Numbered from the stretch's first letter, positions 8,198 to 64,000 are shown. The stretch: DNA of 64,000 nt from Phaeosaccion multiseriatum (GCA_965112735.1 OZ218951.1:930001-994000), one strand, 5' to 3'. Notes: a model not told the origin generated them from the letters alone. Translations and numbers: made by a program.

Positions 8198-9176
8198 CTA
8201 CACCGCCGCCCCCTGTCCGTGGTGCTGCTGACTCTGGCTTTGACCACCACCACTGTGAGCCCCGTGACCCCCACCAGGACCACCCCCCATCCCGTGATGC
8301 CCTTGACTGGTAGCATGGCCCGGGTGGTTTGGGTTGGCGTGGCTGGGGTGATGGTTGGGGTGGTGGTTGTTGCTATTGCCACCATGCTGCTGGTGGCTCT
8401 GACCGCCGGCCCCGCCGCTTCCAAACGAATTGAGCAGCATGTCGTCAAGGCCGTGCTCCGGAGCCAACATGTCGAAACTGCCAAAGGTGGAGGGGAAGCC
8501 TGGAGAGCCCACACCACCGGCGCCGTCGGACAGGCCCCAGGACGGCTGCCGCAAGTGTCGAGCGCCCCCCCTGTGGCCCCGATTGGAGGTGCCGTTGCTG
8601 TAGGAACCGGTGCTACTGCTGCCCGTGCTGAGTACCCCCCCACTGCTTCCTCCTCCTCCCGCTACTAACACTCCTCCTTCTCCTGCTGACCCCGAGCCGT
8701 GCCTCGCTAGCATTTTATCCAGGTCATTGTCGCTGGAGAGGAGATTGGTCTCAAGCTGTTGGTAGCCCACGCCGGGGGGCAGCACGAAGCCACCCGGGGA
8801 AGCTCTCCCTTCACCCCCTCTGCCCTGGGTCGGCGGCAGCGCCCCCCCCTGGTGGTGAGGGTGTTGCTGCTGGTGCGGGTGCTGTGGATGCTGCTGCTGC
8901 TGCTGCTGCTGCTGCTGATGGTAATGATGTTGATGATGCTGGTTGTGGTAGTGAGAGTGCTGGTGGTGGTGCTGGTCATCATAGCCGCCCCTGCCGTGCT
9001 GCATGGCCGAAGCTTGGAATTGGTGGTACGAGGGTAGGTGGGGAAGCGAGTCTCTGTGCTGCTGCTGTTGGTGGTGATGTTGTTGTGGATGTTGTTGTTG
9101 CTGGTGGTGCCGTGGGGGCATGCCATCCTGCTGCTGCTGCTGCTGCCCATGCCCGCCTCGTTGCTGATGATACTGC

Positions 9177-9223
<47 letters not shown>

Positions 9224-32339: not shown

Positions 32340-35300
32340 ATGGATCATGGTGGACGAGGAGGGGCCGATGCCCTAGGAGGAGTGACGCCCGGAGAGACAG
32401 CAGCAGCGGCAGCCGCCACAGGCCGTCCAGCAGCAGGCAGAGGGGATGATGGCCGGAAGACGAAGCCCCTCCTCCTCCCCCGCCACGGCAATGGAAATGA
32501 AGTTTCCAGGGTTGAGGAAGGCCGTCGTAAAGTTCCAACGGGGGGGGTGACGCAAGTCTTGTGGGAGCGAGACTCTCCAGCAGGCGACGAAAAGGAGGAA
32601 CAACGAGGCGGAATCGACGAAGGAGTCGCGACCTCTTCTTCTCTCGCTCCTCTACTGAGGAGGGCTCACGAGGCTGTTGCTGACCTCGGCGACAAGCCCT
32701 TTGCCTTTTGGTACGATGGCAAGGGCAAAGAGGCGGAGAGGTACAGCTTCAGACGCATGTGGGATGAGGTAAGCAACGCAACGACCAAACATTCCGTGGA
32801 GGTGTTGATGCCCTTGCTTGCTCTCTCATGCCGATTCAGCTGCTGCTGGCGTGCTGTAGTCTTGCACCTTAACCCCCCCCCGGTACTCCTACTAGACACT
32901 TTGTGATAATTAACCCAAGATGCGACGTTCTTCTTCTCCCAACCCTGCCTTGTGCTTGCTTCCTCAGGCGGGCAAGATTGCCTACATGCTGCGCGAGGAG
33001 TGGGGCGTGCCCAAGGGCGGCATGGTGGTGCTGTGCTACGGGCCGGGCCTGCATTTCTTCGCCGCCTTCCTGGGCTGCTTCAGAGCAGGTGTGGTGGCGG
33101 TGATGGTGTACCCGCCTGCTCCTCCCCTGTCCAAGTCGCTGCCAAAGATGAGCAAGATCGTGGCGGACTGCAAGCCCATGCTGTGCCTCACCGACTCCAT
33201 CATCGCAGCTGTGCGCAATATGGACAAGGTCAATCTACTCTCGGACTCCCGCAAGCTGTGGCCTGATGACCTCGACTATAAGGCTACAGATGGGGGGCTG
33301 TTCCAGAGCCTCTTCTCCTCCTCATCGTCCTCCTCGTCAGCAAGGAGTTTCAATGAGCTGAGCGTGGCCGAAGAGGACTTGGCCTTCGTGCAGTACACCA
33401 GCGGCTCCACGGGCGACCCCAAGGGCGTCATGGTGACCTTCGGTGCGCTCATGGCCAATGTGTACCTCATCGGCTGCCACCCCGCCACGGGGATGTGCCG
33501 CTTTTGGCCCTCACACAAGGCTGGAGACTCCTCATCAGACCAGCCTGAGGCGAGCCGCAGCGGTCCTATCCAGAGGGCTGCACCAAGTGAGCGGATCCAT
33601 TATATGCCAGCAACGGGCTTCTCGTGGTTGCCCCAGTATCATGTGAGAATAGAGAGGGAAAGTGAGCGAGCGAGAGGAAGTAGAGGCAGGACAGACGAAG
33701 CAAGGGAGGAGAAACGTGGAAACGGCTAGGAACGGAGCGCCAAACCAGCTTGAGGAAGGGGAGAAACGCTGTGCGGTTGGACACCCCTCTGCTATCCTTT
33801 GTGTCTCGTCTTGCCTTTTGCTGTTGCTCACTCGCGCCCCACTCACTACCCTGCCTTCTCTTTCTGTGCTTCTCAGGACATGGGCCTCGTACTCGGCCTC
33901 CTCACCCCCTTCCTGACGGGCATGACTATGCATTACATGTCCCCCGTCAGCTTCATCAAGCGGCCCCTGCTCTGGCTGGAGCTTGTCTCTCGGCACCGCG
34001 TGGAGTGGTCTGTCGCCCCCGACTTCGCCTACGCCCTCTGCGCCCGCTACATGGCCAAGGTGCGCGGCACTCGCAAGGAACCCAAGCTGGATCTGTCTTG
34101 CGTGGTCAGGCTAACGTCGGGAGCCGAGCCAATCCGGGCGGAGACGGTGGAGAGGTTCGAAGGGACCTTCCTGCCTTTCGGCCTCCGGCAGGGGTGAGTG
34201 AGCGTGTGGCACGAGCTATGACTGCGCTTGAGCTCGAGAGACTTGTCCCGACATCCTCCGTGCTCCCCCCTTTTTTCGGCCGGTGAGTGGTTTCTAACCT
34301 CATACCTCGCCCGTGTATGTGCCTCTCTGTGTTTGTGCACTGAGTCGACAGGTGGTTCTCGGCTGCGTACGGGCTCGCTGAGCACGTAGTGTCAGGTAAG
34401 AAGTCTGCACAGAAGGGGGGACGGGTCGAGGCGAAGGGACAGGCGGTGGTGCAGTTAATTCGCTCTCAGTGTAAGAATCGGTCCAGAGGCTCATACACTC
34501 GTCCTCTCGCCTTCCCCACCCCCTTGCACACTTTCCCCAGTCTCCTGGGCCACTGTCCTCGATCGATCGCCTTCTCGTCCCGACCTCACCAGCGTTGGCT
34601 CCCCGAGCGAGAGAGCAGACTTTATGGACATTCGAATCGTCAATCCCGACACCATGGCCGAGGTCAGCGAAGCAGGAGCCATGGGAGAGGTCTGGGTCTC
34701 CTCTCCCTCTGTCGCCGCCGGGTACTGGGGCAAGCCCGAGCTGTCGAAGGAGGTGTTCCAGGCGAAGCTCTCTCTCCAGGGTGGGGCCGGGGGCAGTGAC
34801 AGCAGCTTGTCTCCTCGCCAGTACCTGCGGACAGGTGACTTGGGTTTTGTGGAAGAGGGGCTGCTGTACATCTGCGGCCGCATCAAGGACCTCATCATCT
34901 TCAATGGGGTCAACCACTACCCGCAGGACGTTGAGTTCGCTGTGCAAGAGGCCTCCAGCGCCGTTCGGCAGGGCTGCATTGCGGCCTTCTCCTCCGACGA
35001 GACGGGAGGGGACGGTGTGCTGGAGGTGGTGTTCGAGATCCGCCAAGAGCGAGAGGGCGAGGCCCAGGCAGTGGTGGAGGCCGCTCAGGCCGCCTTGTCG
35101 TCCTCCTTGGGTCTCAGAGCGGCGAAGGTGGTGGCCATCAAGCAGAAGACCATCCCCAAAACCACGAGCGGCAAGATCCGACGGCGGGCGACGAGACAGG
35201 CGCTTCACGCTGGCGAGCTGCACATGGTGCACGAGCTCATCGAGGACCGCGCTACGATGTCACAGGTGCGAGTGAGCGGGAGTGGAGGCCTCTTGCCCAT

Positions 35301-38300
35301 CTCTCCAATCCTTTGCCCCCTTCAGTCTCTGTGCTTTGGTACTTGCCCTTCACAGCCCTTTTCATCCGTGCAGTTGTGGTGAGAGAATCGTCTGCTGAGG
35401 GCTTTGCGTCGAGTCTCACCCCACTTGTCATGCCCATTTCTCCCCCAACCTAAACCGACAGGACTCTCCTCCTGTGAACCTTGCCAGCGTGTGCTCAGCT
35501 CCCGAGGAAAGGGCTTGCTTCGTCGAAGGCGTTGTCCCGGAGGGGAGAGGAGGAGGAGAAGGCGGTCTGGCCATGCGTGCTATGGAGAGCCTCGATAGGG
35601 AGGCAAGGGTGGCCATCATCTTGGAGAAGCTCCTCGAGTTTGCCGTAGAGGTGACGCATAATGGAGATTTGACCGCCGACGACCGCTTCATGGAGGCGGG
35701 CATGACCTCGGTGATGATGGCCGAGCTGGCGGTGATGCTCGAGGACTTTCTGGGCAGCGAGAAGACTGAAGAGTGGAGCGACAAGGATTCTGAGATTGGG
35801 GCCGACGCCCTCTTTGACTATCCGACACCAGCTCTACTCGCAGCTCACCTGGAGACGGTCCTGTTTGGAGAAGAAGAGGAGAACGTCGCTTCCGTTGACG
35901 GACTGCCTCGCTCCATTCCTGGGGTCTCTTCTTCTGACGGTAGCAGCGGCGACATTGCAGTCATTGGGATGGCCTGTCGGTTCCCCGGTGGCTGCAACAG
36001 CCCGGAAGAGTTCTGGGCGAAGCTGTGCAATGAAGAGGACTGCGTCACCGATGCACCCCTTGAGCGAGGCTTGGGAACAGGAGTGAGAGGTGCGTTGCTA
36101 CCCTGTGTCCACGAGGCTTGCAAATGTTAGTCTTAGAGGGCATGGAAGCCTTGCTGGGCGCTTCTTTGCCCGTCTCTGTGCCCCACTCACCCCATTTTGA
36201 ACGCTCCTCCTCTCCCCGTCATGCGAGCAGGTGGCTTCATCGACGGTGTTGAAGCGTTCGACAACGCATTCTTCGGCATGTCCACCGCCGAGGCGGAGGC
36301 CCAAGATCCCAACCAGCGCATCATGCTCGAAGTGGCGTACGAGGCTCTGCACAGAGCCGGCTACGAGGGCCGACGCAGGCTTGAAGGTCACCGAGTTGGC
36401 GTGTTTGTGGGCGCTGCAGGGAGTGACTGGCCCGCTTTGCTGCGTGAGAGCGCGGATGGCGTTCCTCTCAGCGCCTACACGTTGGCAGGGGCAAGCAGAG
36501 CATGTTTCGCTGGCCGCATTTTGCATACACTCGGCCTTGTAGGTCCATGCGAAAGCGTAGATGCGGCATGCTCATCGGCCCTAGTGGCCCTCAGCAACGC
36601 GTGCAACAGTCTGAAACTGAGGCAGTGCAGCTCTGCCGTCGTTGGCGGGGTCAACCTGCTGCTCCATGACCAAGGCTTTGGCGGCCTGGCCAGTGCGGGG
36701 CTTCTGTCGAAGGAAGGGTGAGTGTGCTCCTGCAGCTCTGCATCTATTTTCTTCCTTCCAAAGCGCCCTTTCTCTTCTCTCTGGTCCCTTGCTTGGACAC
36801 TGATCCACCCCGCCCCCCACTCTACTTCCTGTCCCGTCTCCTTCTCCAGGTGCTGCAAATCCTTTGACGCGGCCGGGGACGGCTACGTGCGCAGTGAGGG
36901 CAGCGGGGCAGTCGTGCTGAAGTACCTGCCGGACGCCATCAAGGACGGGGACAACATCCTTGCCGTCATCAAGGCAGCGGCTGTCAGCCACAATGGCGTC
37001 AGCACTTCTCTGTCTGCCCCCAAGGGAGCCGCCCAAGAGAGCTTGGCGAGGAGCGCCCTGCTGCAGGCAGGGTGCGAGGGGAGAGAAGTGGGCTACGTGG
37101 AGGCTCACGCCACGGGAACGGTCATGGGCGACACCATCGAAATGGGTACGTCGAAGGAGGCGAAGGGGGTTAAAAGAGGACCATTCGTGTTGGACCATCC
37201 CTGTCGTTTAGAAGCAGGGCATTCGCGTTGGACCATCATTGTGAAGTCTCTTTTACGTCTCCACTCGAAGAATGATGCTGTGGAGAGAGATATCAAACAT
37301 AAGCTTATTCGTGCCCTCTCTCCCTCCCTCCCTCCCTCCCTCCCTCCCTCCCTCCCTCCCTCCCTCCCTCCCTCCCTCCCTCCCTCCCTCCCTCCCTCCC
37401 TCCCTCCTCCCTCCCTTCCTCCCTCCCTCCCTCCCTCCCTCCCTCCCTCCCTCCCTTCCTCCCTCCCTTCCTCCCTCCCTTTCTCCCTCCCTCCCTCCCT
37501 CCCTCCCTCCCTGCCTCCCTCCCTCCCTCCCTCCCTCCCTCCCTCCCTCCCTCCCTTCCTCCCTCCCTCCCTCCCTCCCTCCCTCCCTCCCTCCCTCCCT
37601 CCCTCCCTCCCTCCCTCCCTCCCTCCCTCCCTCCCTCCCTCCCTCCCTCCCTCCCTTCCTCCCTCCCTCCCTCCCTCCCTCCCTCCCTTTCTCCCTCCCC
37701 CCCCCGCCTCCTTCCCTCCCTCCCTCCCTCCTACCCTCTCTCCCATCCTCCCTCCCTCCCTCCCTCTCTCCGTCCCTCATCCACCTACGCATGAAAGCAC
37801 GTCGCGTGATACTCCTTAGGCGCTCTCAAGGCAGCGTTCACCCCCAACAGGCCTGATGCCTCCCCCCTTGCAGTGGGCACTGTCAAGACTACTCTAGGCC
37901 ACATGGAAGGGGCGTCAGGGATGGCTCAGCTCATCAAGGCCATCTTGGTAGTACAACACCGAGAGGCCCCAGCCAACCTACACCTGAAGGAGATCAACCC
38001 CAACTTGAAGCTGGCGGGCGTACCCGTCACGCTGCCCACCCGAAGGACGCCCCTCTCCTCCCACTGCTCTGACGGCTCGACGCTGCTCGCAGGGGTGAAT
38101 TCCTACGGCGTTGGCGGCTTCAACGCCCACGTCATCTTGGGAAGCTATGGCGGCATGAAGCCCAAAGGCGCAGCAGAGAGAGTGGTCATCCCTTGGCAGG
38201 GGTTCCTCTCGTCACGAGAGTTTCCCCTCCCGAGGAGGGCAATACCCACACACGATTGCGAGGGTCCTGTATCTGCTCCTCTCCCAGCTGGAGACGCCCT

Positions 38301-41300
38301 CTCACAGCTGCGCAAGACTCTCTTTGCGCAATCCCCAGAGGATCGACGCGTTGCTCTCCTGGAAGCGCTCAAGGCGACCGTGCTGAAGTGTGTTGATGCA
38401 GACATGCCCCCGCTGGAGGACAATGTGCCCTTGATGGAGGCAGGCCTGGATTCGATGGCACTCGTGGAGGTGCGGAATCGCCTTCACGCTGACTTGGGGG
38501 TGACAGCCACCGCCGATGTGCTCTTTGAGTACCCCAGCTTGGCGGAGCTGGTGGGCTGGTTGGATGGCGAGGTAATGGGAAGGGCTGCCATAGACCCAAT
38601 GCGAGATTTGCGCTCCACCTCGGCTTCGCCTCAAAGCATGCGAGCTCCGCTGGCGGTGGTGGGCATGGCGTGCCGCTTTCCAGGAGGAGTGACTTCGCCC
38701 CAAGGTTTCTGGAGAATGCTTTGCACGGGATCGGACTGCATCTCTACAGCTCCAGCAGACAGGTGGGGAGGCGGCTCGAAGGAGTGGCGAGGAGGCTTCA
38801 TAGAGGGCGTCCACCTCTTCGACAACATCTTCTTTGGGATTTCGTCAGCGGAAGCGGAAAGCATGGACCCCAACCAGCGCGTGCTGCTGGAGGTGGCCTT
38901 CGAGGCGCTGCACAGGGCAGGCTGTGACAAGAGCAAACTCCGCAAGAGCGAGACAGGGGTCTTCATCGGCTGCGCTGGAAGCGATTGGCTGCAGGCCAAA
39001 GCAAGCCAAGGAGCTGGCGAGGCGAGCGAGGGCGTGTACACGGCGTCAGGAGCCTCCATGTCGAATTTGGCCAACCGAGTTTCCTACGCGCTGGGGTTGA
39101 AGGGGCCGAGCTCAACTGTAGACACGGCGTGCTCCTCTTCCTTGGTCGCCCTGGACAACGCCTGCAGCAGCCTGCGATTGGGCAAGTGTGACACAGCTGT
39201 GGTCGGTGGAGTGAACCTGCTTCTCAGCGAGGCGCCCTTCAAGCTCCTTTCCTCAGGAGGGTTTCTCTCGCCAGACGGGTGAGTGCTTGAGTGTGCGTGA
39301 GGGAGGAGGAGAGAGGGGGGGGGGGGCAGGGAGGAAGGAAGGAGGAGAGGGAGGGAGGGAGGGAGGGAGGGGAGGGAGGAAGTCAATGAGTATGATGCTC
39401 TCCAGGTGAAGGCCCGATATGGTAGTCGGTAGGCACCTGGTCATGCACCACTGTTTCGTTCAGGGAGGTAGAGTAAGAACCTTAAATCGCCCCTTCTTAT
39501 CTAAATCTTCCCTGTTTCCCCCTTGCTTCCTCACTCTCAAGGCACTGTAAAACATTTGACAAGGCCGCCAACGGCTACGTCAGAGGCGAGGGGTGCGGAG
39601 CAATCGTGGTGAAGCGCCTAGACGACGCCCTTGCCAACGACGATGAGGTGCTGGCTGTCCTGCGAGGCTCGGCTGTGAACCATAATGGGCCCACCGCGCG
39701 GATGACGGCTCCAAACCCTGGTGCTCAAAAGCAGCTCATCACAGACGCCTTTATCGACGCCGGGCTATCTCCAAACGACGTTAGCTTCGTCGAGGCGCAC
39801 GGCACGGGCACGTCTCTCGGCGACCCCATCGAGATGAGCGCTCTCAGAGGAGTATTCGCCCCCCACCGCGATGAAGCGAAGCCTTTGATCGTGGGGGCGC
39901 TCAAGACAAACATCGGGCACTTGGAGGGAGCGGCAGGGATTGCCGGACTCATCAAAGCCGTCCTGGTGGCGCAGCACAAGACCGCTCCACCCAATCTTCA
40001 CTTCATCGAGCCAAACCCAGAGCTCGACATGGAGGGAATTGCAGTCCTGTTCCCATCTTCCATGACCCCTTTACCCACCAGCTCCGATGGATCTGTGGTG
40101 GTCGGGGTGAGCTCCTTCGGATTTGGAGGCACCAACGCCCACGCACTGCTCAGCAGCTTCGGACCAACGTTGGTTGAGAGGGGTGAGGTCTTGCTGCAGC
40201 TGGATGGGCAGCAAAGGAAGAAGATATCGCCGCCGGTGACGTTCTTGTTCACTGGACAGGGCTCGCAGTACGTGGGCATGGGCAGGGAGCTGTACGAGAA
40301 GGAGGGCGTGTTCCGCGAGTGCGTGCAGCGGTGCAGTACGCTGCTCATGGAGCGGGCTTGGTTGGACAAGTCTGTGGTGGAGCTCATGTACCCAGCCGCC
40401 GCTGAGGATGGGGAGGAGGAGGAGGAGGAGGAGACTGCACAAGCGCTGCTGAAGGAGACACGCTACTACCAGCCATGCCTGTTTGTGCTGGAGTACGCCC
40501 TGTGTGAGCTGTGGAAGTCGGAGGGCGTGGAGCCGTCCATGGTGATGGGCCACAGCCTGGGCGAGGTGGTGGCGGCGTGCGTGGCCGGCGTCATGTCGAT
40601 GGAGGACGGGCTGATGCTGTCCGCCAAGAGAGGGGCCGCCATGCAGGCCTGCCCCGAGGGCAAAGGAGTGATGTTCGCAGTAAGGGCAGGCAAGGAGGCG
40701 ACTCTGGCAAGCATCGACGCTGTGGGGGCGGCAGGCGAGGTGGTGCTGGCGTCGTCGAATGGACCGAGCACGAGCGTGATCTCTGGAGCTCGCAGCGCTG
40801 TGGACAAGATGGTGGAGAAGCTCACGGCGGATGGGGTGGGCTGCAAGGCCCTGGAGGTGCCGCACGCCTTCCACTCTCCTCTCATGGAGCCCGCTGTACT
40901 TGCGCTGGAGGAGGTTCTGAGGCAGGTGTCATTGAGCGCCCCACGCATTCCCCTGGTGTCTAACGTGACGGGTGAGGTAGTGAGAGAGGAGGAGGTGACG
41001 CAGGCGACGTATTGGGTGCAACACATGCTGTCGCCAGTGCTGTTCGCAGAAGGCATCCATACGGTGGTGGAGCACTGGATGGGAGACGGGAGGGGGGCTG
41101 ACCTGAGCATCGTTGAGGTGGGCCCCAGCCCTGTGCTGAGCAGTATGGGGGCCAAGTGCGAGCGTCGCGAAGGGCTGGTGTGGATCTCTTCTCTCACGCG
41201 CGGGAAGAGCTCCGAGGATTCGTTTCGAGCAGCTCTGAGCACAGTGCAGCAGCCAGAGAGTAAGGGTGAGGAGCACATCCTGTTCCCAACGCGCAAAGCC

Positions 41301-53300: not shown

Positions 53301-56300
53301 GGCTTGTCCAATCAGAGCGCCTATGCCGGGGCCAACGCTGCTTTGGACGGGCTGATGCGCTACCGCCGACGCCAGCTTGGCCTTCCTGCTTCCAACGTTC
53401 AGTGGGGCCCATGGGGCGACGTAGGTATGGCGGTGCGGCTTGAAATGGTGTCGAAAGCTGCGGAGATGGCCGGAGTGGGCCTGATCTCATCGGCGCTGGG
53501 TATGAAGGCTCTGGAAGCCGTTCTTGCAAGTCAAGCGCAAGCCAACGGGCAGGAGGTGGCTGTCATGCCGGCCATGAGGTGGGGCAGATTTCGAGCGAGC
53601 TTGGACCCGGTGCTCAGCGATTTCCTCGGGCAGTTGACGGACCGCTGGGAAAGTGGTGAGGCGACAAAGTGCTACAGCGTCAATGCCGAGGTGCGGGAGG
53701 AGCTCCTGCACTTGCCGGAGTCCGCACGGCGGGAGAGGATCGAGCAAGTCCTGACGGACATGGTGGTCGAGTGCGTTGGCGAGGACTTGATCATTACATC
53801 TACAATGCCTTTGATGGAAGCCGGACTCGATTCGATGGCGGCCGTGGAGTTTGGCAAGCGAATCGAGGCCTGGTGTGGTGTCACCATGTCGAGCGGCGCC
53901 TTCTTTACGTATCCATCAGTGTCTGCAATGGCTTCATGGATCGAAGAGGAAGTGCTGGGAGCGGACTCGGGGCCGCTGAGTGAGCCTGATGATCAAGCAA
54001 CAGGTCTTTCGCACTACTCCTTGGATGCTGACGCCCCCGCGGCTTACCAGCAGGAGCACATGTACCTTTCGGACGTAGCACTGCGGACGACTGCCCCTGG
54101 CGGGCAGAGCGCGTACAATCTCCCAGTGGTGCTGCCGCTGCCAGTCTCGCTGATCTCCGGACGAACATCCGCTGAAATTGTGGACATGATAGCACAAGTG
54201 TTAGGCAGTATAGTGGAGCGACATGACGTGCTCCGGACGGCGCTTGAGTGGACAAAGCAGGGCTCTCTGAGGCAGGTACAGCTTGGAACTACGGCAACCG
54301 CGGTAGTGTCAGCTTGTCTCTCTTCTGCCGTGGCCAGCAGTGCTGGGGCGGCTCGGAGCCTGATCGAGGCTGATATCGCTCGTACATTCGATTTGGAGCG
54401 GAGCCAGCCTCTATGGCGTACGTTGGTCGTACACCTCCCGCAGCAGAGCGGAGTGGAGGAGCAGTATGCCGCGGTATCTACTTTCCATCATTGCATCTTT
54501 GATGGTGTATCCTACTTGCTCTTCCAGGGCGAGTTCAAGGCCACATGCGCAGCTGCCATGGCGGGGAGAGGCATTGCACAAGACCTACCGGCTCTGCCCT
54601 TCAGCTTCGCGGACTACTCCAGGTGGCAACGAGCTCGGCTGGACGGCGAAGGTCGTATTGAGGAGCTGCTTGAATACTGGCAGGGTCAACTGGCTGGTAC
54701 CAGTCCACTGCAGCTGCCTCTCCATCAGCCACATGCCCAAAAGGGCCTCAGTGGAGAAATGGTGCATGAAGATATCAGTGTGGGAGGGAGTGGGAGGGTG
54801 AAGTTGGTGCTACCCAATGCAGTGGTGGTCAAGCTAAGTAAACTGTGTGCGGATAGCTCCGCCACGCTGTTTGTGGGGCTCATGGGCGCGTTCCAAGTGC
54901 TGCTGGCTCGTGTGTGCGGAGCGGAGGATGTGGTGGTGGGCACTGCTCACTTCGGAAGAGACTTGGCGCAAGGCTTGGAGGGCGTGCTGGGATGCTTCGT
55001 CAACACCCTCGCGTTCCGTCTGGGCCTGGGAGGAAGCCCCAGCTTTCGAGAGGTGCTGCTTCGCGTACAGGTCGCGTATCTGGGTGCCATGAAGCATGCC
55101 GAGGCGCCATTCCACAAGGTGGTGGAGCGGGCCCAGCTGGGCAGAGATGATCGTGGCAAGGCGCTGCAGGCCTTCTTTGTACTGCAGGAGGCGGGTTTGG
55201 ATACTTTGAAGAATCAGGAGGCGGGAGTTGATACTTGGAAGAATAATGCGACTGACATCGAGCTATGTCTTGTGCGCAGCACGGACAGTGCGTCGGACAT
55301 GCACGGCAGCCTGTGCTACAATGCGGCGGTGCTCGACCAGGCCACAGTGGAGACCCTGGCGCGGAGCTTCCTGGCGCTGCTGAAGAGTGCAGTGGGCAGG
55401 CCGGGCGAGAGCGTGTGGAAGCTGAATCTCTTGGCACACGAGGACCGTGTGAAGGTGGTGGAGACGTTGAGCGGCGCTGCACTGGTGGCGGGGGATGGCA
55501 ATGGAGACGAGGAGGGAGGTGCAGAGGAAGCATCGCCACCACCGCCCCTCCTGCACGCGGCTTTCGAAGAGATGGCCTCTCGCAGTCCGGAGCAGGAAGC
55601 CCTGCACGAGTATGAGACGGGTCGGGTGATGAGCTACGGGGAGCTCAATGGGCATGCGAATGCGGTGGCATGCATGCTGCAGGGGAGGGGCATGGGGCCG
55701 GAGTGCCTGGTGGGGGTGCTGATTGCTGGGGACTGCGTGGAGGCGGTTGTGGCAGTGCTGGGCGTGCTCAAGGCCGGGGCGGCGTACGTGCCCCTGGATC
55801 CCGAGCATCCCGACGATAGGCTGGCGACTATCGCACAAGACGCCGGGCTGAGCATCGTTCTGACAGCAGCAACTGGGGCGGACCATGTGGAACAAGGCCT
55901 CCCCACAGGCGATAGGTCGGCTCGCACCGTCGGAGGCGCGAGCTGTGTGGATGTGAGGGCCATGATGCAGCTCGAGGCGGCTGCTACGACAGTCTCTGAG
56001 GTGGAGTGTAAGGCCGTCTATAACAATGTGGCGTATGTGATACACACTTCTGGAAGCACCGGGCGACCGAAGGGTGTGGTGGTCGAGCATAGAAACACGG
56101 CCAGCTTCATGGCGACGCTCTACCAGACGCAATTGAGCACCATAGACCCTTCGTCACGGGTGCTGCTGAGCAGCGCTTTGACTTTCGACGTGTCGGTGGC
56201 GGTGATCTTCGGGGCTCTGTCATGCGGGGCGACGCTCTGCCTGGTACAAAGGCTCTCCATGTTGAGCGAGCTGCCAGAGGTTGTGCGCTCGCTTGGGGTG

Positions 56301-59300
56301 TCGTTCTTGTGGTGTACTCCGTCACTACTGTCTTTGCTCCCACAGCCTCATGGTGGAGAAGTGGGTTTCCCGAGTCTTCGGTCGATCGCGCTTGGGGGGG
56401 AGCCGCTACAGCAAGAGCAGGTCGATTACTGGAAGCACCGAGTGCGACTGGGAAATTCTTATGGACCCACAGAGACGGCGGTGTCAGTCACCTGGCACGA
56501 GTACACACCCGGGGCCCTTTCGAGTTGGTTCGTCATCGGCAAGCCTCGAGCCGGCGTGCAAGTGTATGTGGTGGACAAGCGTCTGCAGTTGGTGCCCCAG
56601 GGCGTGGAGGGAGAGCTTTGCATTGGGGGGAGACAGCTGGCGCGTGGGTACTTGAATCGCCCAGAGCTCACGTCGAAGGCCTTCATCCCCGCGCCCTTCC
56701 TGGAGGACCAGTGCAGGGTGTATCGTACGGTAAGTCGCAATGGTAGCCCACGGGTGTGCGGCTTTGTGTGTGTGTTGTGTGTCTGTACATTCGACTTGCT
56801 TTTCGCATACCATGCAATGACAAGCAGAGAGCGCAGGGGGGGGTAGGAGGTTGATTTCTCTGCTGCCCTGTGCACTGCTCTGATCTGACGCGTGTCAAAC
56901 TTAAAACCGTTCTGACAGGGCGACTTGGTGCGGCAGGTGGCAGACGGATCGCTGGTGTTTAGGGGTCGCCGAGACTCTCAAGTGAAGGTGCGCGGCCATC
57001 GCATTGAGCTGGGCGAGGTGGAGGCTGCGCTGCTCCATCAAGAGGGTGTGAGGAGCGCTGTGGCAGCCGTGGACAGAGAGCGCGAGACGGTTGTGGCGGC
57101 TCTGACACCTTCTAGTGCCGAAGTTGATATGGTGCTGCAAGGAGTGAGCAAGCTGCTACCGGCATACATGGTGCCGAGCACGGCTGTGGCCATGGATGCT
57201 CTACCAATGACGAGCAGCGGGAAGCGAGACGTGAAAGAGGTTCTAGGAGCCATTCGAGCGACACATCATGATAGTCCTGGCAGGCAGCGGAGCATATGCA
57301 TCAGCGATGACGCACCTACGGACGACACCACCCGTCAAGTGCTCGACATTATGCGAGAGGCCATTGGGCGACCGGATCTGCGAGCCAGCGGCGACTTGTT
57401 CGCCGAGGGAGGCACTTCGCTTGACGCTGCAAGTGTTACAGCACGCATCCGCGCAGAGGTGCCAGGCTTCGAGGTGAGTGGGATGGAAGGTTGCCATAGT
57501 GGTGTGGCCGGTAGTTCCAAATGGTATTGCTAATGTAGGTCTTGCCCTTCGGATGTCTTTACTCGTTGCACTCGTTGCTGTACTCAGGCGCTCCGAGTGG
57601 CAGACATGTTCCAGACACCCACCGCGAGGGGTGTGTCTCGCTTATGTGCGAGCAGGGAGGACACACTTCCTGGCATGATGGTAATACCGCGAGTTGGCGA
57701 CCATCGTGAGGCTCCAGCGTCGTACCAACAGGAGCACATGCTGCTGTCGGACCTGGCGCTGCGAGCGGGCGACCCAGACGGGAGGGCGCGATACAACGTG
57801 CCCATGCTTCTACCCATGCCCAGCTCCGAATCGGAGAGAGAGCCCAGCGAGGTTGTGGACGGCTTGTCCCGTGCCCTGTGCGCCATGGTGGAGCGTCACG
57901 ATGTTCTGAGATTGGCGCTAGGCTGGTCACCGGAGGGGACGCTGCAGCAGGTGCGGCTGCAGACCACAGCAGCGGAGGTTGTGGCGTCAGTGCTCCTGTC
58001 CGCAGAGGCGAACAGCGTCGAAGAGGCCGAGAGCGTGCTATTGGCAGAGGCGGGGCGCCTGTTTGACTTGGAGGAGGAAAGGCCACTCTGGCGCAGCACC
58101 ATCGTCACCGTTGCACCGCCCCAGGATGGTGAGAAGGAGTACCCGCTGGGGCGGCAAGCGGTGCTGTGTGTCTTCCACCACTCCATCATGGATGGGTGGT
58201 CGTACCCACTGTTCTCGCGAGAGCTGTTGGTCCTGTGGGGGGCTGTCGTGTCTGGCCGAGAGGCGACAGAGGCGCTAGCGGCTCTGCCGTTTGGGTATGC
58301 GGACTACTCCCGGTGGCAGCGGTCGCGACTGGACGGGGACAACGGCCTGGCCCTGGAGCAGCTGTTGGAGTACTGGCAGGGGCAGCTAACGGGGGCGTCT
58401 TCACTGACCCTGCCCCTCGACCGACCGCACGGTGCTTTCGGCCCGCATCTGACGGAGACTATAGGTCAAGACGGGATTGTGGGGGGGCGCGGCGGGAGTG
58501 TTGCTGTTGTTCTGCCGGCTTCGCTCATAGTGAAGCTGAGCAAGCTATGCTCGAGTAGCTCCGCCACGCTGTTTGTGGGGCTCATGGGCGCGTTCCAAGT
58601 GCTGCTGGCTCGTGTGTGCGGAGCGGAGGATGTGGTGGTGGGCACTGCGCACTTCGGAAGGGACATGGCGCAAGGCTTGGAGGGAGTGCTGGGATGCTTC
58701 GTCAACACCCTCGCGTTCCGTCTGGGCCTGGGAGGAAGCCCCAGCTTTCGGGAGGTGCTGCTTCGCGTACAGGTCGCGTATCTGGGTGCCATGAAGCATG
58801 CCGAGGCACCGTTCCACAAGGTGGTGGAGCGGGCCCAGCTGGGTAGAAAGAGTGGTGGCAAGGCGCTACAAGCCTTCTTTGTACTGCAGGAGGGAAATGC
58901 CAGCGCCGTGGAGGAGGAGGCCCACCTGTCAGCTGGAGCACTCCACAAGATCATGACGGAGGAGGCTGGACAGCAGCAGGGCAATGACGTTAGCCAGACT
59001 GACATCGAGCTAAGCCTTGTGCGCAGCACGGACAGTGCGTCGGACATGCACGGCAGCCTGTGCTACAATACGGCGGTATTCGACCAGGCCACAGTGGAGA
59101 CCCTGGCGCGGAGCTTCCTGGCGCTGCTGGAGAGTGCAGTGGGCAGGCCGGGCGAGAGCGTGTGGAAGCTGGGTCTCTCGGCACACGAGGACCGTGTGAA
59201 GGTGGTGGAGACGCTGAGCGGCGCTGCACTGGTGGCGGAGGATGCCAATGGAGACGAGGAGGGAGGTGCAGAGGAAGCATCGCCACCACCGCCCCTCCTG

Positions 59301-62300
59301 CACGCGGCTTTCGAAGAGATGGCCTCTCGCAGTCCGGAGCAGGAAGCCCTGCACGAGTATGAGACAGGTCGGGTGATGAGCTACGGGGAGCTCAATGGGC
59401 ATGCGAATGCGGTGGCGTGCATGCTGCAGGGGAGGGGCGTGCGGCCGGAGTGCCTGGTGGGGGTGCTGATTGCTGGGGACTGCGTGGAGGCGGTTGTGGC
59501 AGTGCTGGGCGTGCTCAAGGCCGGGGCGGCGTACGTGCCCCTGGATCCCGAGCATCCCGATGACAGGCTGTCGATGATCGCACAAGACGCAGGGCTGAGC
59601 GTCGTTCTGACGACGGCAGAGGCAGCAGGCGAGTCTGAGGTGCTGGCAACCGCCGATGCCAGCTTAGCGCGGCGTGTCGGAGACGTGAGCTGTGTGGACG
59701 TGGTGGCTGTGATGCAAGTGGAGAGTACCGCGGAGCTTGTGTGCCACGCGGTGGGCGAGAGCATGGCGTACGTGATCTACACATCCGGTAGCACAGGCCG
59801 GCCAAAGGGCGTGATGATTGAGCACAGAAGCACGGCCTGCTTCATGGCGACTCTCTACGAATTCGAACTGACAGTGACAGCATCTTCGCGCGTGCTTCTG
59901 AGCAGCGCTTTGACTTTCGATGTGTCTGTGGCGTTGCTGTTCGGGACGTTGTCGTGCGGGGCGAAGCTGTGTTTGGCAGAGAAGGGCTCCCTGCTGAACG
60001 ACCTGCCGGAGCTGATACGGTGTTTCGGGGTGACGGAAGCTGAATTTACCCCCTCACTGTTGTCACTGCTGAAACCGGGAGACATTATGGAGGAGGGCAC
60101 CTTACGGTCCATCGCTTTGGGTGGGGAGACAGTGAAGCAGGATCAAGTGGACATGTGGAGGCACCATGTGCGCCTCGTTAATAGCTACGGTCCAACAGAG
60201 GCGACGGTTTCCGCGACCGCACATGAGTACTCCTCTGGGGCCCTGTCGAGCGCATCTGTCATCGGCAAGCCTCTGACCGGCGTGCAAGTGTATGTGGTGG
60301 ACAAGCGTCTGCAGCTGGTGCCTCAGGGCGTGGAGGGCGAGCTGTGCATTGGGGGGAGACAGCTGGCGCGTGGGTACTTGAACCGCCCAGAGCTCACGTC
60401 GAAGGCCTTCATCCCCGCGCCCTTCTTGACGGACCAGCGCAGAGTGTATCGTACGGTAAGTCGAAAAGGTTGCCCATGGGTGTGCGGCTTTTTGTGTGTG
60501 CGTGTATTGTGTGTACATTTGGCTTGCTTTTGGCCTGTCATGCAGTGAAAAGCAGAAAACGCACGGGGGGGGGGGATGGAGGTAGTTCTCTGTGTTGCCC
60601 TGTGCACTGCTCTGATCTGACGCGTCTCAAACTTAATACATTCTGATAGGGTGACTTGGTGCGGCAGCTGGCAGACGGATCGCTGGTGTTTAGGGGTCGC
60701 CGAGACTCTCAAGTGAAGGTGCGCGGCCATCGCATTGAGCTGGGCGAGGTGGAGGCTGCGCTGCTCCATCAAGAAGGTGTGAGGAGCGCTGTGGCAGCCG
60801 TGGACAGAGACCGCGAGACGGTTGTGGCGGCTCTGACACCTTCTAGCGCCGAAGTTGATATGGTGCTGCAAGGAGTGAGCAAGCTGCTACCGGCATACAT
60901 GGTGCCGAGCACGGCTGTGGCCATGGATGCTCTACCAATGACGAGCAGCGGGAAGCGAGACGTGAAAGAGCTTCTTAGAGCCATTCGAGAGGCACATGAC
61001 CATGGCCCTGGCAGGCAGCGGAGCCTAGGCGTCAGCGATGACGCACCTATGGACGACACCACCCGTCAAGTGCTCGACATTATGCGAGAGGCCATTGGGC
61101 GACCGGATCTGCGAGCCAGCGACGACTTGTTCGCCGACGGAGCCACTTCGCTTGACGCTGCAAGTGCCACAGCACGCATCCGCGCAGAGGTTCCAGGCTT
61201 CGAGGTGAGTGGGGTGGAGGGCTGTCTTTCTGGTGTGGCCGGTAGTTCCAAATGGTTTGCTAATATAGTTGTGTACCGTCGGATATCCTTACTCGTTGCT
61301 GTACTCAGGCGCTCCAGGTGGCAGAGATGTTCCAGACACCCACCGCGAGGGGTGTGTCTCGCTTATGTGCGAGCAGGGAGGACACGCTTCCTGGCATGAT
61401 GGTGATACCGCCTGTTGGCGACCATCGTGAGGCTCCAGCGTCGTACCAACAGGAGCACATGCTGCTGTCGGACCTGGCGCTGCGAGCGGGCGACCCAGAC
61501 GGGAGGGCGCGATACAACGTGCCCATGCTTCTACCCATGCCCAGCTCCGAATCGGAGAGAGAGCCCAGCGAGGTTGTGGACGGCTTGTCCCGTGCCCTGT
61601 GCGCCATGGTGGAGCGTCACGATGTTCTGCGATTGGCGCTAGGCTGGTCACCGGAGGGGACGCTGCAGCAGGTGCGGCTGCAGACCACAGCAGCGGAGGT
61701 TGTGGCGTCAGTGCTCCTGTCCGCCGAGGCGAACAGCATCGAAGAGGCCGAGAGCGTGCTATTGGCAGAGGCGGGGCGCCTGTTTGACTTGGAGGAGGAA
61801 AGGCCACTCTGGCGCAGCACCATCGTCACCGTTGCACCGCCCCAGGATGGTGAGAAGGAGCACCCGCTGGGGCGGCAAGCGGTGCTGTGTGTCTTCCACC
61901 ACTCCATCATGGATGGGTGGTCATCCAAGCTGTTCTCGCGCGAGCTGTTGGTCATGTGGGGGGTTGTCGCGTCTGGCCGAGAGGCGACGAAGGCGCTAGC
62001 GGCTCTGCCGTTTGGGTATGCGGACTACTCGCAGTGGCAGCGGTCGCGGCTGGACGGGGACAACGGCCTGGCCCTGGAGCAGCTGTTGGAGTACTGGCAG
62101 GGGCAGCTAACGGGGGCGTCTACACTGACCCTGCCCCTGGACCGACCGCACGGTGCTTTCGGCCCGCATCTGACGGAGACTGTAAGTCAAGATGGGATTG
62201 TGGGGGGGCGCGGCGGGAGTGTCGCTGTTGTTCTGCCGGCTTCGCTGATAGTGAAGCTGAGCAAGCTATGCTCGAGCAGCTCCGCCACGCTGTTTGTGGG

Positions 62301-64000
62301 GCTCATGGGCGCGTTCCAAGTGCTGCTGGCTCGTGTGTGCGGAGCGGAGGATGTGGTGGTGGGCACTGCGCACTTCGGAAGGGACATGGCGCAAGGCTTG
62401 GAAGGAGTGCTGGGATGCTTCGTCAACACCCTCGCGTTCCGTCTGGGCCTGGGAGGAAGCCCCAGCTTTCGGGAGGTGCTGCTTCGCGTACAGGGCGCGT
62501 ATCTGGGTGCCATGAAGCATGCCGAGGCACCGTTCCATAAGGTGGTGGAGCGGGCCCAGCTGGGCACAAAGAGTGGTGGCAAGGCGCTACAAGCCTTCTT
62601 TGTACTGCAGGAGGGAGATGCCAGCGCCGTGGAGGAGGAGGCCCAGCTGTCAGCTGGAGCACTCCACGAGATCATGACGGAGGAGGCTGGAGAGCGGCAG
62701 GCCAATCAGTTTAGCAAGACTGACATCGAGCTAAGCCTTGTGCGCAGCACGGACAGTGCGTCGGACATGCACGGCAGCCTGTGCTACAATACGGCGGTGC
62801 TCGACCAGGCCACAATGGAGACCCTGGCGCGGAGCTTCCTGGCGCTGCTGGAGAGTGCAGTGGGCAGGCCGGGCGAGAGCGTGTGGAAGCTGAGTCTCTT
62901 GGCACACGAGGACCGTGTGAAGGTGGTGGAGACGCTGAGCGGCGCTGCACTGGTGGCGGAGGATGCCAATGGAGACGAGGAGGGAGGTGCAGAGGAAGCA
63001 TCGCCACCACCGCCCCTCCTGCACGCGGCTTTCGAAGAGATGGCCTCTCGCAGTCCGGAGCAGGAAGCCCTGCACGAGTATGAGACAGGTCGGGTCATGA
63101 GCTACGGGGAGCTGAATGGGCATGCGAATGCGGTGGCATGCATGCTGCAGGGGAGGGGCATGGGGCCGGAGTGCCTGGTGGGGGTGCTGATTGCTGGGGA
63201 CTGCGTGGAGGCGGTTGTGGCAGTGCTGGGCGTGCTCAAGGCCGGGGCGGCGTACGTGCCCCTGGATCCCGAGCATCCCGACGATAGGCTATCGATGATC
63301 GCACAAGATGCCGGGCTGAACGTCGTTCTCACAGCAGCAACTGGGGCGGACCATGTGGAACAAGGCCTCCCCACAGGCGGTAGGTCGGCTCGCTCCGTCG
63401 GAGGCGCGAGCTGTGTGGATGTGAGGACCATGATGCAGCTCGAGGGGGCTGCTACGACAGTCTCTGAGGTGGAGTGTAAGGCCGTCTATAACAATGTGGC
63501 GTATGTGATATACACGTCTGGAAGCACCGGGCGACCGAAGGGTGTGGTGGTCGAGCATAGAAACGCGGCCGGCTTCATGGCGACGATCTACGAAACGTTA
63601 CTGGGCACTATAGACCCTTCGTCACGGGTGCTACTGAGCAGTGCTTTGACTTTCGACATGTCGGTGGCATTGATCTTCGGGGCTCTGTCATGCGGGGCGA
63701 CGCTCTGCCTGGTACAAAGGCTCTCCATGTTGAGCGAGCTGCCAGAGGTTGTGCGCTCGCTTGGGGTATCGTTCTTGGGGTTCACTCCGTCACTACTGTC
63801 TTTGCTCCAACAGCCTCATGGTGGAGAAGTGGGTTTCCCGAGTCTTCGGTCCATCGCGCTTGGGGGAGAGGCCTTACGTCAAGAGCAGGTCGATTACTGG
63901 AAACACCGAGTGCGACTGGGCAATGCTTATGGACCCACAGAGACGGCGGTGGCAGTCACCTGGCACGAGTACACACCGTCTGCCGTGCCGAGCGCGTCCG
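32340..64000 (+). CDS. Giant hybrid FAAL-PKS-NRPS megasynthetase, 3'-truncated, about 9,500 aa in the window
   Basis: Exons 32340-32768, 32968-33642, 33877-34193, 34352-34395, 34541-35265, 35462-36089, 36231-36717, 36850-37145, 37820-39278, 39542-43831, 44086-50199, 50357-56729, 56919-57473, 57588-60455, 60650-61204 and 61309-end all join via GT-AG in a continuous frame. Splicing restores split motifs (WLPQYH|DMGL, YRT|GDL). The KS, AT, DH, ER, KR, C, A and carrier motifs are listed in the sub-features. Confidence 0.93.
32640..35870 (+). other. Loading module: fatty acyl-AMP ligase (FAAL) plus ACP
   Basis: [76 protein letters not shown]; [13 protein letters not shown]. Confidence 0.88.
35950..38575 (+). 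other. PKS module 1: KS-ACP (no AT, no reductive domains)
   Basis: [49 protein letters not shown], then ~70 aa leading to [12 protein letters not shown]. Confidence 0.85.
37315..37770. repeat. ~450-bp (CCCT)n polypyrimidine microsatellite inside intron 8 of the PKS-NRPS gene
   Basis: Near-continuous ccct units between donor 37146 and acceptor 37819. Confidence 0.95.
38640..43140 (+). other. PKS module 2: KS-AT-KR-ACP
   Basis: [19 protein letters not shown]; AT GHSLGE and HAFHS (malonyl-type); [25 protein letters not shown]; ACP GLDSM. Confidence 0.9.
43200..49510 (+). other. PKS module 3: KS-AT-DH-ER-KR-ACP (full reductive loop)
   Basis: QTACSS/HGTGT; AT GHSLGE/HAFHS; [29 protein letters not shown]; [12 protein letters not shown]; [18 protein letters not shown]; ACP GLDSL. 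Confidence 0.9.
49575..53960 (+). other. PKS module 4: KS-AT-KR-ACP
   Basis: DTLCSS/HGTGT; AT GHSLGE/HAFHS; KR GGLGGLG, HAAGVNG (no LDD), QSAYAGAN; ACP GLDSM. Confidence 0.9.
54030..57645 (+). other. NRPS module 1: C-A-PCP
   Basis: C FHHCIFDG; [60 protein letters not shown]; [12 protein letters not shown]. Confidence 0.9.
57710..61370 (+). other. NRPS module 2: C-A-PCP
   Basis: C FHHSIMDG; [23 protein letters not shown]; [12 protein letters not shown]. Confidence 0.9.
61430..64000 (+). other. NRPS module 3: C-A (truncated by the window end)
   Basis: C FHHSIMDG; [23 protein letters not shown]; near-duplicate of module 2 at a 3721-bp offset. Confidence 0.9.

What the first reader, a model, noticed from the sequence alone, without database searches (positions are those of the whole stretch)
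32340..64000. Single-polypeptide FAAL-primed modular PKS-NRPS lipopeptide assembly line in an intron-rich eukaryotic (probably algal) genome
Seen: at least 16 exons splice into one frame of ~9,500 aa (still open at the window end) with order FAAL-ACP, KS-ACP, KS-AT-KR-ACP, KS-AT-DH-ER-KR-ACP, KS-AT-KR-ACP, then at least 3 C-A-PCP modules. The catalytic motifs I checked look intact. Known: FAAL-ACP loading followed by PKS and NRPS modules is the logic of bacterial lipopeptides (e.g. mycosubtilin, jamaicamide, puwainaphycin), while typical fungal PKS-NRPS hybrids have one iterative PKS and one NRPS module. Inference: colinearity predicts a fatty acyl chain extended by four malonyl units (keto, hydroxy, methylene, hydroxy) and then amide-linked to 3 or more amino acids. 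That would be a lipopeptide I cannot match to a known product. The upstream neighbours are housekeeping genes, with no tailoring enzyme, PPTase or transporter in view.
Basis: partly seen in the sequence, partly recalled or inferred. Interest (0 to 1): 0.95.

Follow-up and report, generated by a model that had tools for sequence, protein, structure and literature searches.

The report
Giant algal lipid-peptide assembly-line gene
This alga carries one very large, intron-split gene that joins a fatty-acid loader, four polyketide modules and at least three peptide modules, a layout typical of bacterial lipopeptide factories; it is a real and unusually large example of a known enzyme type, and no transcript or product has been shown.

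Summary
From ATG 32340 I rebuilt 16 exons joined by 15 GT-AG introns. They give one open frame of 9,502 aa, still open at base 64000. The domain order is as reported: FAAL-family ligase-ACP, KS-ACP, KS-AT-KR-ACP, KS-AT-DH-ER-KR-ACP, KS-AT-KR-ACP, C-A-PCP, C-A-PCP, C-A (cut by the window end). All catalytic motifs checked are intact.

The gene is native and eukaryotic. Its GC3 matches its neighbours, all four KS share one intron site, and the NRPS modules share homologous introns. KS1-4 and C1-3 each form one clade against sampled bacterial domains, so modules multiplied inside the gene. The nearest database relatives are bacterial, at 53% identity or less for KS and 38% or less for C-A.

Not shown: a transcript (the runs I could lay look like DNA), the release domain, the product, and whether the loader has the FAAL-specific insertion. 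That last point depends on which of two in-frame splice donors is used.

Algal PKS-NRPS hybrids and eukaryotic FAAL-PKS or FAAL-NRPS fusions are already published, so this is a large new member of a known kind. The scan also flagged this stretch in overlapping windows, and other giant PKS(-NRPS) genes about 1.65 Mb away in the same genome.

The parts
32340..64000 (+). Megasynthase gene as far as the window shows it. 16 exons: 32340-32768, 32968-33642, 33877-34193, 34352-34395 (or 34352-34470), 34541-35265, 35462-36089, 36231-36717, 36850-37145, 37820-39278, 39542-43831, 44086-50199, 50357-56729, 56919-57473, 57588-60455, 60650-61204, 61309-64000 (open).
   Evidence: all 15 introns are GT..AG, the spliced frame is 9,502 aa without a stop, and the Pfam domains are continuous across the joins.
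32652..35250 (+). Loading ligase of the FAAL family (aa about 105-725, five exons)
   Evidence: The best solved relatives are all FAALs: 7R7E/F/G, FadD32, FadD23, FadD28, 3KXW and 3PBK. For exon 5 the best NCBIfam families are fatty acyl-AMP ligases, E 1e-47 to 1e-34, ahead of the CoA ligase families. Motifs [27 protein letters not shown] and [10 protein letters not shown] are present.
34396..34470 (+). 75-nt stretch that is either intron or coding. Two in-frame donors (GTAAGAAG at 34396, GTAAGAAT at 34471) leave out or include 25 aa directly after YGLAE, which is the position of the FAAL-specific insertion.
   Evidence: Against six solved FAALs and four FAAL profiles, the A5-to-next-strand segment of the short form is 16-22 aa too short and that of the long form 3-9 aa too long. 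The short form matches McyG and the bacterial protein P0142.
35579..35821 (+). ACP1 (loading carrier, Ser in GMTS)
   Evidence: PF00550, E 1.6e-7; motif.
35954..38568 (+). Module 1: KS1 and ACP2, with no AT and no reductive domain
   Evidence: Cys/His/His present. Only about 90 aa lie between the KS1 end and ACP2.
38650..43121 (+). Module 2: KS2-AT-KR-ACP3. AT has HAFH (malonyl type). KR has an LDD-like 'ALDD' motif (B type).
43209..49495 (+). Module 3: KS3-AT-DH-ER-KR-ACP4 (fully reducing)
49583..53942 (+). Module 4: KS4-AT-KR-ACP5. From AT to ACP it is 96-100% identical in protein to module 2, except for a KR patch that lacks LDD.
54060..57665 (+). NRPS module 1: C1 (HHCIFDG), A1 (pocket D-V-A-W-A-G-S-V-S-K), PCP1
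57753..61383 (+). NRPS module 2: C2 (HHSIMDG), A2 (pocket D-V-A-E-A-G-S-V-S-K), PCP2
61471..64000 (+). NRPS module 3: C3 and the first part of A3 (pocket D-M-A-G-A-G-A-V-A), cut off by the window end
37146..37819 (+). Intron 8 (674 nt), which holds a (CCCT)n microsatellite of about 470 nt. A contig in all four public runs lacks exactly this intron.

Best explanation
This is a genuine nuclear gene of a eukaryotic alga. It encodes, at least on paper, one colinear megasynthase. The inferred mechanism runs as follows. An N-terminal FAAL-family ligase adenylates a fatty (or other lipophilic) carboxylic acid and places it on the fused ACP1. KS1 extends the chain with a malonyl unit on ACP2; this module has no AT of its own, so the malonyl unit must be loaded in trans or by a neighbouring AT, and the original carbonyl stays a ketone. 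Modules 2 to 4 add three more malonyl units, processed to beta-hydroxy (LDD-type KR), methylene (DH-ER-KR) and beta-hydroxy (KR without LDD). C1 then joins the 3-hydroxyacyl chain to the amine of the first amino acid, and C-A-PCP modules add further residues. The expected result is an N-acylated linear or cyclic lipopeptide. Release and the full peptide length are encoded beyond the window. Shown here: gene structure, domain order, intact motifs, native base composition, and growth of the gene by internal duplication of intron-carrying modules. Inferred only: transcription as one mRNA, the substrates, and the product.
For: The 16-exon, 15-intron GT-AG model is open for 9,502 aa. Domain order comes from Pfam. 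Exon 12 holds KS-AT-KR-ACP-C-A without interruption. Motifs are intact. The loader is closest to FAAL structures and FAAL families. The ATs carry GHSLG and HAFH. All four KS have a phase-2 intron at the same codon, although the KS proteins are only about 55-70% identical. The two NRPS-module introns recur at the same positions and are 82% identical between modules. KS1-4 form one clade (support 1.0) against 140 bacterial KS, and C1-3 form one clade (1.0) against 129 bacterial C domains. Ka/Ks between sister modules is 0.34-0.42. GC3 is 0.72 against 0.69-0.73 in neighbouring ORFs. Neighbours include an RWP-RK protein. Repeated modules differ by 3-11% at the DNA level, so they are not collapsed copies. 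A contig in all four runs joins the exons flanking intron 8 exactly at the predicted GT/AG borders.
Against: There is no RNA evidence. In the four runs laid, intron contigs have about the same depth as exon contigs, and most 'joints' keep GTAAG...CAG, so they are divergent intron alleles, meaning DNA. The listed sequence variants give only weak signs of constraint: 18 nonsynonymous to 11 synonymous, from an incomplete list. Module 1 lacks an AT, and only about 37 aa separate each KS from its AT, so the usual linker domain is missing. The FAAL-specific insertion is absent from the model with the better donor. An unchecked note of this scan (s1-336563) reports a 29-nt duplication that frameshifts the last module about 15.5 kb beyond the window.
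Confidence: 0.78

Rival explanations
1. The gene is real but no longer makes a finished product. It may be a decaying or truncated assembly line, for instance because a frameshift in the last module removes the final carrier and release domains.
For: An unchecked scan note (s1-336563) reports a 29-nt duplication frameshift beyond the window. The listed read variants show a fairly high nonsynonymous share, 18 to 11, including radical changes such as W835G and L495P. No transcript was found.
Against: In the window, 28.5 kb of coding sequence and 15 splice sites are intact with no stop or frameshift. All catalytic motifs are present. Ka/Ks between modules is 0.34-0.42. A frameshift in one assembled haplotype need not be fixed, and the runs show a second allele throughout.
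Confidence: 0.2
2. The loader is not a working FAAL. If the upstream donor (34396) is used, the ligase lacks the FAAL-specific insertion. It might then act as an acyl-CoA ligase-like or generic acyl-ACP ligase, and it could prime with a different carboxylic acid.
For: The upstream donor, CAG|GTAAGA, fits the gene's donor pattern: 13 of the other 14 donors have G at position -1. The downstream donor has T there. The short form has the A5-to-next-strand spacing of non-FAAL adenylating enzymes such as McyG, and of a bacterial PKS-fused ligase, P0142.
Against: Every one of the ten best solved relatives, and the best NCBIfam families, are FAALs. The ligase is fused directly to an ACP. The read-through continues '...VVSGKK...', resembling the '...V(S/A)GG(R/K)...' that follows YGLAE in P0142. 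Published work shows that CoA rejection rests mainly on other features, not on the insertion (PMC8460268).
Confidence: 0.25
3. The locus gives several separate transcripts or polypeptides, for example loader plus PKS and NRPS made apart, rather than one giant protein.
For: No transcript data exist. Giant algal PKS gene models have been questioned on this point before (PMC4661987 raises this possibility for Chlamydomonas).
Against: No in-frame stop occurs anywhere in the spliced model. Exons bridge ACP1-KS1, ACP2-KS2, ACP3-KS3, ACP4-KS4 and ACP5-C1-A1. Introns are short (104-674 nt) and leave no room for intergenic regions.
Confidence: 0.1
4. The stretch is bacterial contamination, or the repeated modules are an assembly artefact.
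For: The nearest relatives of every domain are bacterial. The modules are repetitive.
Against: There are 15 canonical spliceosomal introns with microsatellites. Base composition and GC3 match the flanking eukaryotic genes. The best bacterial identity is only 53% for KS and 38% or less for C-A. Module copies differ by 3-11% with ordered, in-frame differences. Independent DNA runs cover the 5' 6 kb.
Confidence: 0.02

Closest known systems
Bacterial FAAL-primed PKS/NRPS lipopeptide lines (mycosubtilin/iturin MycA type, puwainaphycin, jamaicamide; reviewed in PMC11837247)
   Same: The logic is the same: a fatty acid is adenylated and put on an ACP, extended by KS-containing modules, and passed to C-A-PCP modules. 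The domain families and motifs are of bacterial type.
   Different: Here there is one intron-split eukaryotic gene instead of an operon of several proteins. There is no aminotransferase domain, so the lipid would be N-acyl linked rather than a beta-amino acid. There are four PKS modules, the first without an AT. The best identity to any bacterial relative is 53% (KS) and 38% or less (C-A). The bacterial comparison rests on my own knowledge plus the review, not on an alignment to those proteins.
Algal multimodular type I PKS with an N-terminal ligase (Shelest et al. 2015, PMC4661987; O'Neill 2020, PMC7073580; PKZILLAs, bioRxiv 10.1101/2024.01.29.577497)
   Same: These are also giant, intron-containing, colinear single-gene synthases in microalgae. 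They also show growth by module duplication and AT-less modules.
   Different: Those enzymes are PKS only or nearly so. This gene carries at least three full NRPS modules. Shelest et al. called NRPS rare in algae and gave 10 domains as the largest algal NRPS then known.
Algal and dinoflagellate hybrid PKS-NRPS genes (Chrysochromulina tobin, PMC4580454; Breviolum minutum, PMC7073580)
   Same: They are eukaryotic algal hybrids of PKS and NRPS domains in large open frames.
   Different: As described, those have one or a few NRPS domains, aminotransferases, methyltransferases and an irregular order. This gene is a regular FAAL-4xPKS-nxNRPS line.
Eukaryotic FAAL fusions catalogued by FAALPred (PMC12820801)
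   Same: The paper lists FAAL-PKS fusions (diatoms, Preaxostyla) and FAAL-NRPS fusions (oomycetes, chytrids, chlorophytes) as occurring in eukaryotes.
   Different: The text I read names no FAAL-PKS-NRPS triple fusion, and none of this size.
Olefin synthase FAAL domain (PDB 7R7E/F/G, deposited as 'Polyketide synthase')
   Same: It is the best solved relative of the loader (E 2.6e-39 for exon 5). It is likewise a FAAL at the head of a PKS.
   Different: It belongs to a one-module bacterial system. Between motif A5 and the next strand it has about 20 residues more than the short model of this gene.
Nematode PKS-1/NRPS-1 (nemamides; PMC8363725)
   Same: It is a eukaryotic multimodular PKS plus NRPS making a hybrid lipid-peptide.
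   Different: It consists of two proteins that need extra free-standing enzymes, and it is of animal lineage. No sequence comparison was made here.

Membership tests
Fatty acyl-AMP ligase (FAAL) | Sequence closest to FAAL rather than acyl-CoA ligase families | tested here: met
   The top PDB hits for all three large exons are FAALs. In NCBIfam, FAAL families score E 1e-47 to 1e-34 and rank ahead of the CoA ligase families.
Fatty acyl-AMP ligase (FAAL) | FAAL-specific insertion of about 20 aa after motif A5 (PMC11837247) | tested here: inconclusive
   The insertion is absent with the donor at 34396 and present as 25 aa with the donor at 34471. Both donors are in frame, and no RNA is available to decide.
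Fatty acyl-AMP ligase (FAAL) | Hands the acyl group to a cognate ACP, not to CoA | not testable with these tools
   An ACP is fused directly downstream, which fits the feature. The chemistry itself needs an assay.
Colinear cis-AT type I PKS | KS with Cys-His-His, and an ACP serine, in every module | tested here: met
Colinear cis-AT type I PKS | An AT in every module, joined to its KS by a linker domain of about 100 aa | tested here: not met
   Module 1 has no AT. In modules 2-4 only about 37 aa lie between the KS 'NAH' motif and the AT 'GQGSQ' motif. The three ATs are 97% identical at the DNA level. The gene therefore works like a cis-AT line in modules 2-4 but is not a textbook member.
NRPS elongation modules | C with HHxxxDG, A with cores A3-A10, PCP with serine | tested here: met
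   The third module is only partly in the window.
NRPS/PKS assembly line | Terminal release domain (TE, R or other) | not testable with these tools
   The frame runs off the window at 64000, and the contig could not be extended.
Iturin/mycosubtilin-type lipopeptide synthetase | Aminotransferase domain after the first PKS module, making a beta-amino fatty acid | tested here: not met
   Pfam finds no aminotransferase domain in any exon.
Fungal iterative PKS-NRPS hybrid | One iterative PKS module followed by one NRPS module | tested here: not met
   There are four KS and at least three C-A sets.
Spliceosomal-intron-bearing nuclear gene | Canonical GT-AG introns that restore the frame | tested here: met
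   All 15 introns qualify. One junction was seen joined in public contigs.

The most novel reading that the evidence does not exclude
The gene is active and makes a previously unseen class of algal lipopeptide: a keto/dihydroxy polyketide-extended fatty acyl chain on a peptide of about eight residues, counting the modules that other notes report beyond the window. It would be a bacterial-style colinear line that was built up inside a eukaryote by duplication of intron-carrying modules. In addition, a choice between two in-frame splice donors may switch the FAAL-specific insertion of the loader in or out.
Probability: 0.25. Interest if true: 0.8.

Novelty: new member of a known kind. Interest (0 to 1): 0.55.

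Why it matters
Multi-module NRPS are rare in algae, and no algal lipopeptide pathway has been tied to a gene. This locus offers a concrete, testable candidate for an acylated peptide from a microalga. It is also a clear case where shared intron positions and homologous introns show that assembly-line modules multiplied inside a eukaryotic genome. The near-identical AT-to-ACP blocks that differ only in a KR patch, and the A domains that differ mainly in pocket residues, form a natural experiment in module re-specification.

Tried and rejected
1. RNA support. I used both run searches and the single read-laying run. The runs behave like DNA of a second allele or strain, so they give no splicing or expression evidence beyond one intron-less contig.

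2. Extending the contig. The look-up of encoding contigs with the 983-aa ORF found nothing on record. The metagenome scan found only relatives at 27-36% identity.

3. Finding eukaryotic kin. The word-based searches are limited to a length band. The exhaustive search ranks by summed score, so its top 150 are huge bacterial NRPS at 38% identity or less, and a short close relative could be hidden.

4. Naming the organism through a neighbour. The RWP-RK ORF found nothing. Calling it a 'stramenopile alga' rests on other agents' unchecked notes.

5. Deciding the exon-4 donor by homology. The 39-aa piece is too short for a PDB search, and only segment-length comparisons were possible.

6. A-domain substrates. 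I extracted the pocket residues by motif anchoring and ran no predictor. The resemblance of A2 (Glu at position 278) to the ornithine code is from memory only.

7. Antisense ORFs inside the gene have no Pfam match, so I set them aside as chance ORFs.


Full report
**What is there.** The + strand from about 32.3 kb to the window end is packed with long stop-free stretches in changing frames. Pfam assigns them, in order:
- AMP-binding plus a DIP2-like AMP C-domain, then PP-binding
- KS, PP-binding
- KS-AT-KR-PP
- KS-AT-DH-ER-KR-PP
- KS-AT-KR-PP
- Condensation-AMP-binding-PP, twice
- Condensation-AMP-binding, cut by the window end

E-values run from 1e-8 for the carrier domains to 1e-74.

**Gene model.** I read every frame change by eye. 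Each is bridged by an intron with GT at its start and AG at its end. Donors are mostly GTGAGT, GTAAGT or GTACGT, and acceptors follow pyrimidine-rich tracts. With ATG at 32340, 16 exons and 15 introns (104-674 nt), the spliced frame is 28,507 nt, or 9,502 aa, without a stop, and it is still open at base 64000. Exons bridge the functional borders:
- Exon 6 holds ACP1 and the start of KS1.
- Exons 9, 10 and 11 each run from one module into the next KS.
- Exon 12 (6,373 nt) holds KS4(C-part)-AT-KR-ACP5-C1-A1.

The PKS-to-NRPS fusion therefore does not depend on any splice prediction. ORFs on the opposite strand have no Pfam match.

**Native and eukaryotic.**
- All four KS domains carry a phase-2 intron at the same codon, within the S(P/K/S)(D/E)(G/W)|xCK(T/S)FD motif. 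Their proteins are only about 55-70% identical and these introns share no detectable sequence.
- Both complete NRPS modules carry introns at YRT|GDL in the A domain and at PGFE|AL(R/Q) in the PCP. These introns are 82% identical between the two modules, so whole intron-bearing modules were duplicated as DNA.
- KS1-4 form one clade (support 1.0) against 140 bacterial KS domains drawn from the best database hits. C1-3 form one clade (1.0) against 129 bacterial C domains. These trees contain no other protist sequences, which limits what they show.
- GC3 of the gene is 0.72, against 0.69-0.73 in neighbouring ORFs.
- The upstream neighbours are an RWP-RK protein, a SAP-domain protein, a CBM_4_9 protein and ORFs without matches. 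No PPTase, thioesterase or transporter was seen among them. Genes made of short exons would have escaped this scan.

Bacterial contamination is effectively excluded.

**Relatives.**
- The C-A exon finds only bacterial NRPS at 37% identity or less in the 525-1,673 aa band, 38% or less in the exhaustive representative search and 36% or less in metagenome contigs.
- The KS-to-A exon finds bacterial cis-AT PKS from myxobacteria, cyanobacteria and mycobacteria. The best KS identity is 53%.
- The protein-atlas neighbours are all bacterial NRPS.

The domains are thus of bacterial type but distant from anything sampled. Close eukaryotic kin could still be hidden by the length band and by ranking on summed score.

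**Loader.** Exons 2, 3 and 5 each find fatty acyl-AMP ligases as their best solved relatives. These are the FAAL domain deposited as 7R7E/F/G, FadD32, FadD23, FadD28, Legionella 3KXW and E. coli 3PBK. NCBIfam ranks FAAL families (E 1e-47 to 1e-34) ahead of the CoA ligase families.

One defining feature is unsettled. The 44-nt exon 4 ends at a good donor (CAG|GTAAGA, 34396). A second in-frame donor (AGT|GTAAGA, 34471) lies 75 nt downstream, and the stretch between them is open. Using the second donor adds 25 aa directly after YGLAE, exactly where FAALs carry their specific insertion (PMC11837247). Measured against six FAAL structures and four FAAL profiles, the short form is 16-22 residues too short in this segment and the long form 3-9 too long. 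The short form matches the non-FAAL McyG and a bacterial PKS-fused ligase, P0142. Donor strength favours the short form, since 13 of the other 14 donors have G at -1. Family length, and the '...VVSGKK' continuation, favour the long form. Only cDNA can decide. Published work shows that CoA rejection depends mainly on other FAAL features (PMC8460268), so I still regard fatty-acid loading onto ACP1 as the likeliest function.

**PKS part.**
- All four KS keep Cys-His-His.
- Module 1 is KS-ACP only, with about 90 aa between them. It needs an AT in trans or a neighbour's AT.
- The three ATs are 97% identical at the DNA level. They carry GHSLG and HAFH (malonyl type) and follow their KS after only about 37 aa, so the usual KS-AT linker domain is missing.
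- KR2 and KR3 have LDD-like motifs (ALDD, VLDD). KR4 has neither LDD nor the A-type Trp.
- Modules 2 and 4 are 96-100% identical in protein from AT to ACP, except for a KR patch of about 115 aa at 55-65%.
- DH has its His, YGP and DxxxH motifs, and ER has its GGVG.

**NRPS part.** C1 (HHCIFDG) is 60% identical to C2 and C3 (HHSIMDG), and C2 and C3 are 94% identical to each other. There is no room for epimerisation or methylation domains. I anchored the A-domain pockets on FDxS, TPS, GGE and NxYGPTE:
- A1: D-V-A-W-A-G-S-V-S-K
- A2: D-V-A-E-A-G-S-V-S-K
- A3: D-M-A-G-A-G-A-V-A (the Lys lies outside the window)

The three pockets differ mainly at position 278. The Glu in A2 recalls the ornithine-type code, but that is from memory and was not tested with a predictor. 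Ka/Ks between sister modules is 0.34-0.42.

**Transcription.** The four runs found with the 5' 6 kb give intron contigs at about the same depth as exon contigs. Most 'joints' keep the first five and last three intron bases with unknown sequence between, so they are a second allele with diverged introns, meaning DNA. A second search with the intron-free exon 12 gave the same share of words, as expected for DNA of a variant allele.

There is one exception. A contig in all four runs joins 37140 to 37819 with four letters between. Written out, this is the exact exon 8-exon 9 junction with two nearby substitutions. It confirms those splice borders but could be cDNA, an intron-less allele or a paralogue.

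Among the variants listed in that 6 kb, 11 are synonymous, 18 nonsynonymous and 11 intronic. The list is incomplete and gives only weak evidence of constraint.

**Beyond the window.** I could not extend the contig. Unchecked notes of this scan say that the gene runs on for about 15.5 kb with five more modules, that it has the same intron positions there, and that a 29-nt duplication frameshifts the last module. Other notes describe two further giant PKS(-NRPS) genes about 1.65 Mb away, one of them also FAAL-primed, and call the organism a stramenopile alga. I tested none of these claims, apart from those that overlap my window.

**Comparison with the literature.**
- Shelest et al. (PMC4661987) describe algal multimodular PKS, often headed by a ligase, that evolved by module duplication and AT displacement. 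They call NRPS rare in algae, with 10 domains as the largest.
- Hovde et al. (PMC4580454) and O'Neill (PMC7073580) report hybrid PKS-NRPS in Chrysochromulina and Breviolum.
- The FAALPred survey (PMC12820801) lists eukaryotic FAAL-PKS and FAAL-NRPS fusions.
- My text searches found no description of a FAAL-4xPKS-multi-NRPS single gene in an alga.

The kind is therefore known, and this is a large, regular and well-preserved new member.

**Verdict.** The architecture and the eukaryotic origin are shown. One transcript, the FAAL completeness, the release step and the product are not. Interest is moderate to high, not exceptional.

Noticed in passing
window 34396-34470: Two in-frame 5' splice donors lie 75 nt apart, both GTAAGAA. 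Choosing between them leaves out or includes 25 aa at the site of the FAAL-specific insertion. This may be alternative splicing or simply an uncertain gene model.
   Followed up: partly
window 37140-37819: A contig in all four public runs lacks intron 8 exactly and carries two substitutions next to the junction. Its depth is similar to that of neighbouring contigs. It could be an intron presence/absence allele, a paralogue or cDNA.
   Followed up: partly
window 37308-37780 and 39290-39380: Long microsatellites sit inside introns: (CCCT)n of about 470 nt in intron 8 and a (GGAGGGA)-like run in intron 9.
   Followed up: no
window 40229-41317, 44746-45833, 51038-52135: The three AT domains are 97% identical at the DNA level although the KS domains around them are only about 60-70% identical in protein. 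Each AT follows its KS after about 37 aa, without the usual linker domain. This suggests recent homogenisation or insertion of one AT cassette.
   Followed up: partly
window about 42290-42640 versus 53110-53460: Modules 2 and 4 are near-copies from AT to ACP, except for a KR patch of about 115 aa. The LDD motif is present in module 2 and absent in module 4. This looks like a localised swap or a retained difference at the stereo-determining region.
   Followed up: partly
window 20659-24151: The genome's dispersed 15-mer CAGTTGGTGATACAG occurs three times exactly and once with two mismatches within 3.5 kb upstream (0.11 expected by chance). It does not occur at all in the 31.7 kb of the megasynthase gene.
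   Followed up: partly
window 8198-11227 (- strand): A 1,009-aa ORF with an RWP-RK domain found no relative at E<=1e-5 in the 5.8-billion-protein search.
   Followed up: partly
window 1947-3761 (+ strand): A 605-aa open stretch carries a CBM_4_9 carbohydrate-binding domain (E 6e-16). I did not examine it further.
   Followed up: no
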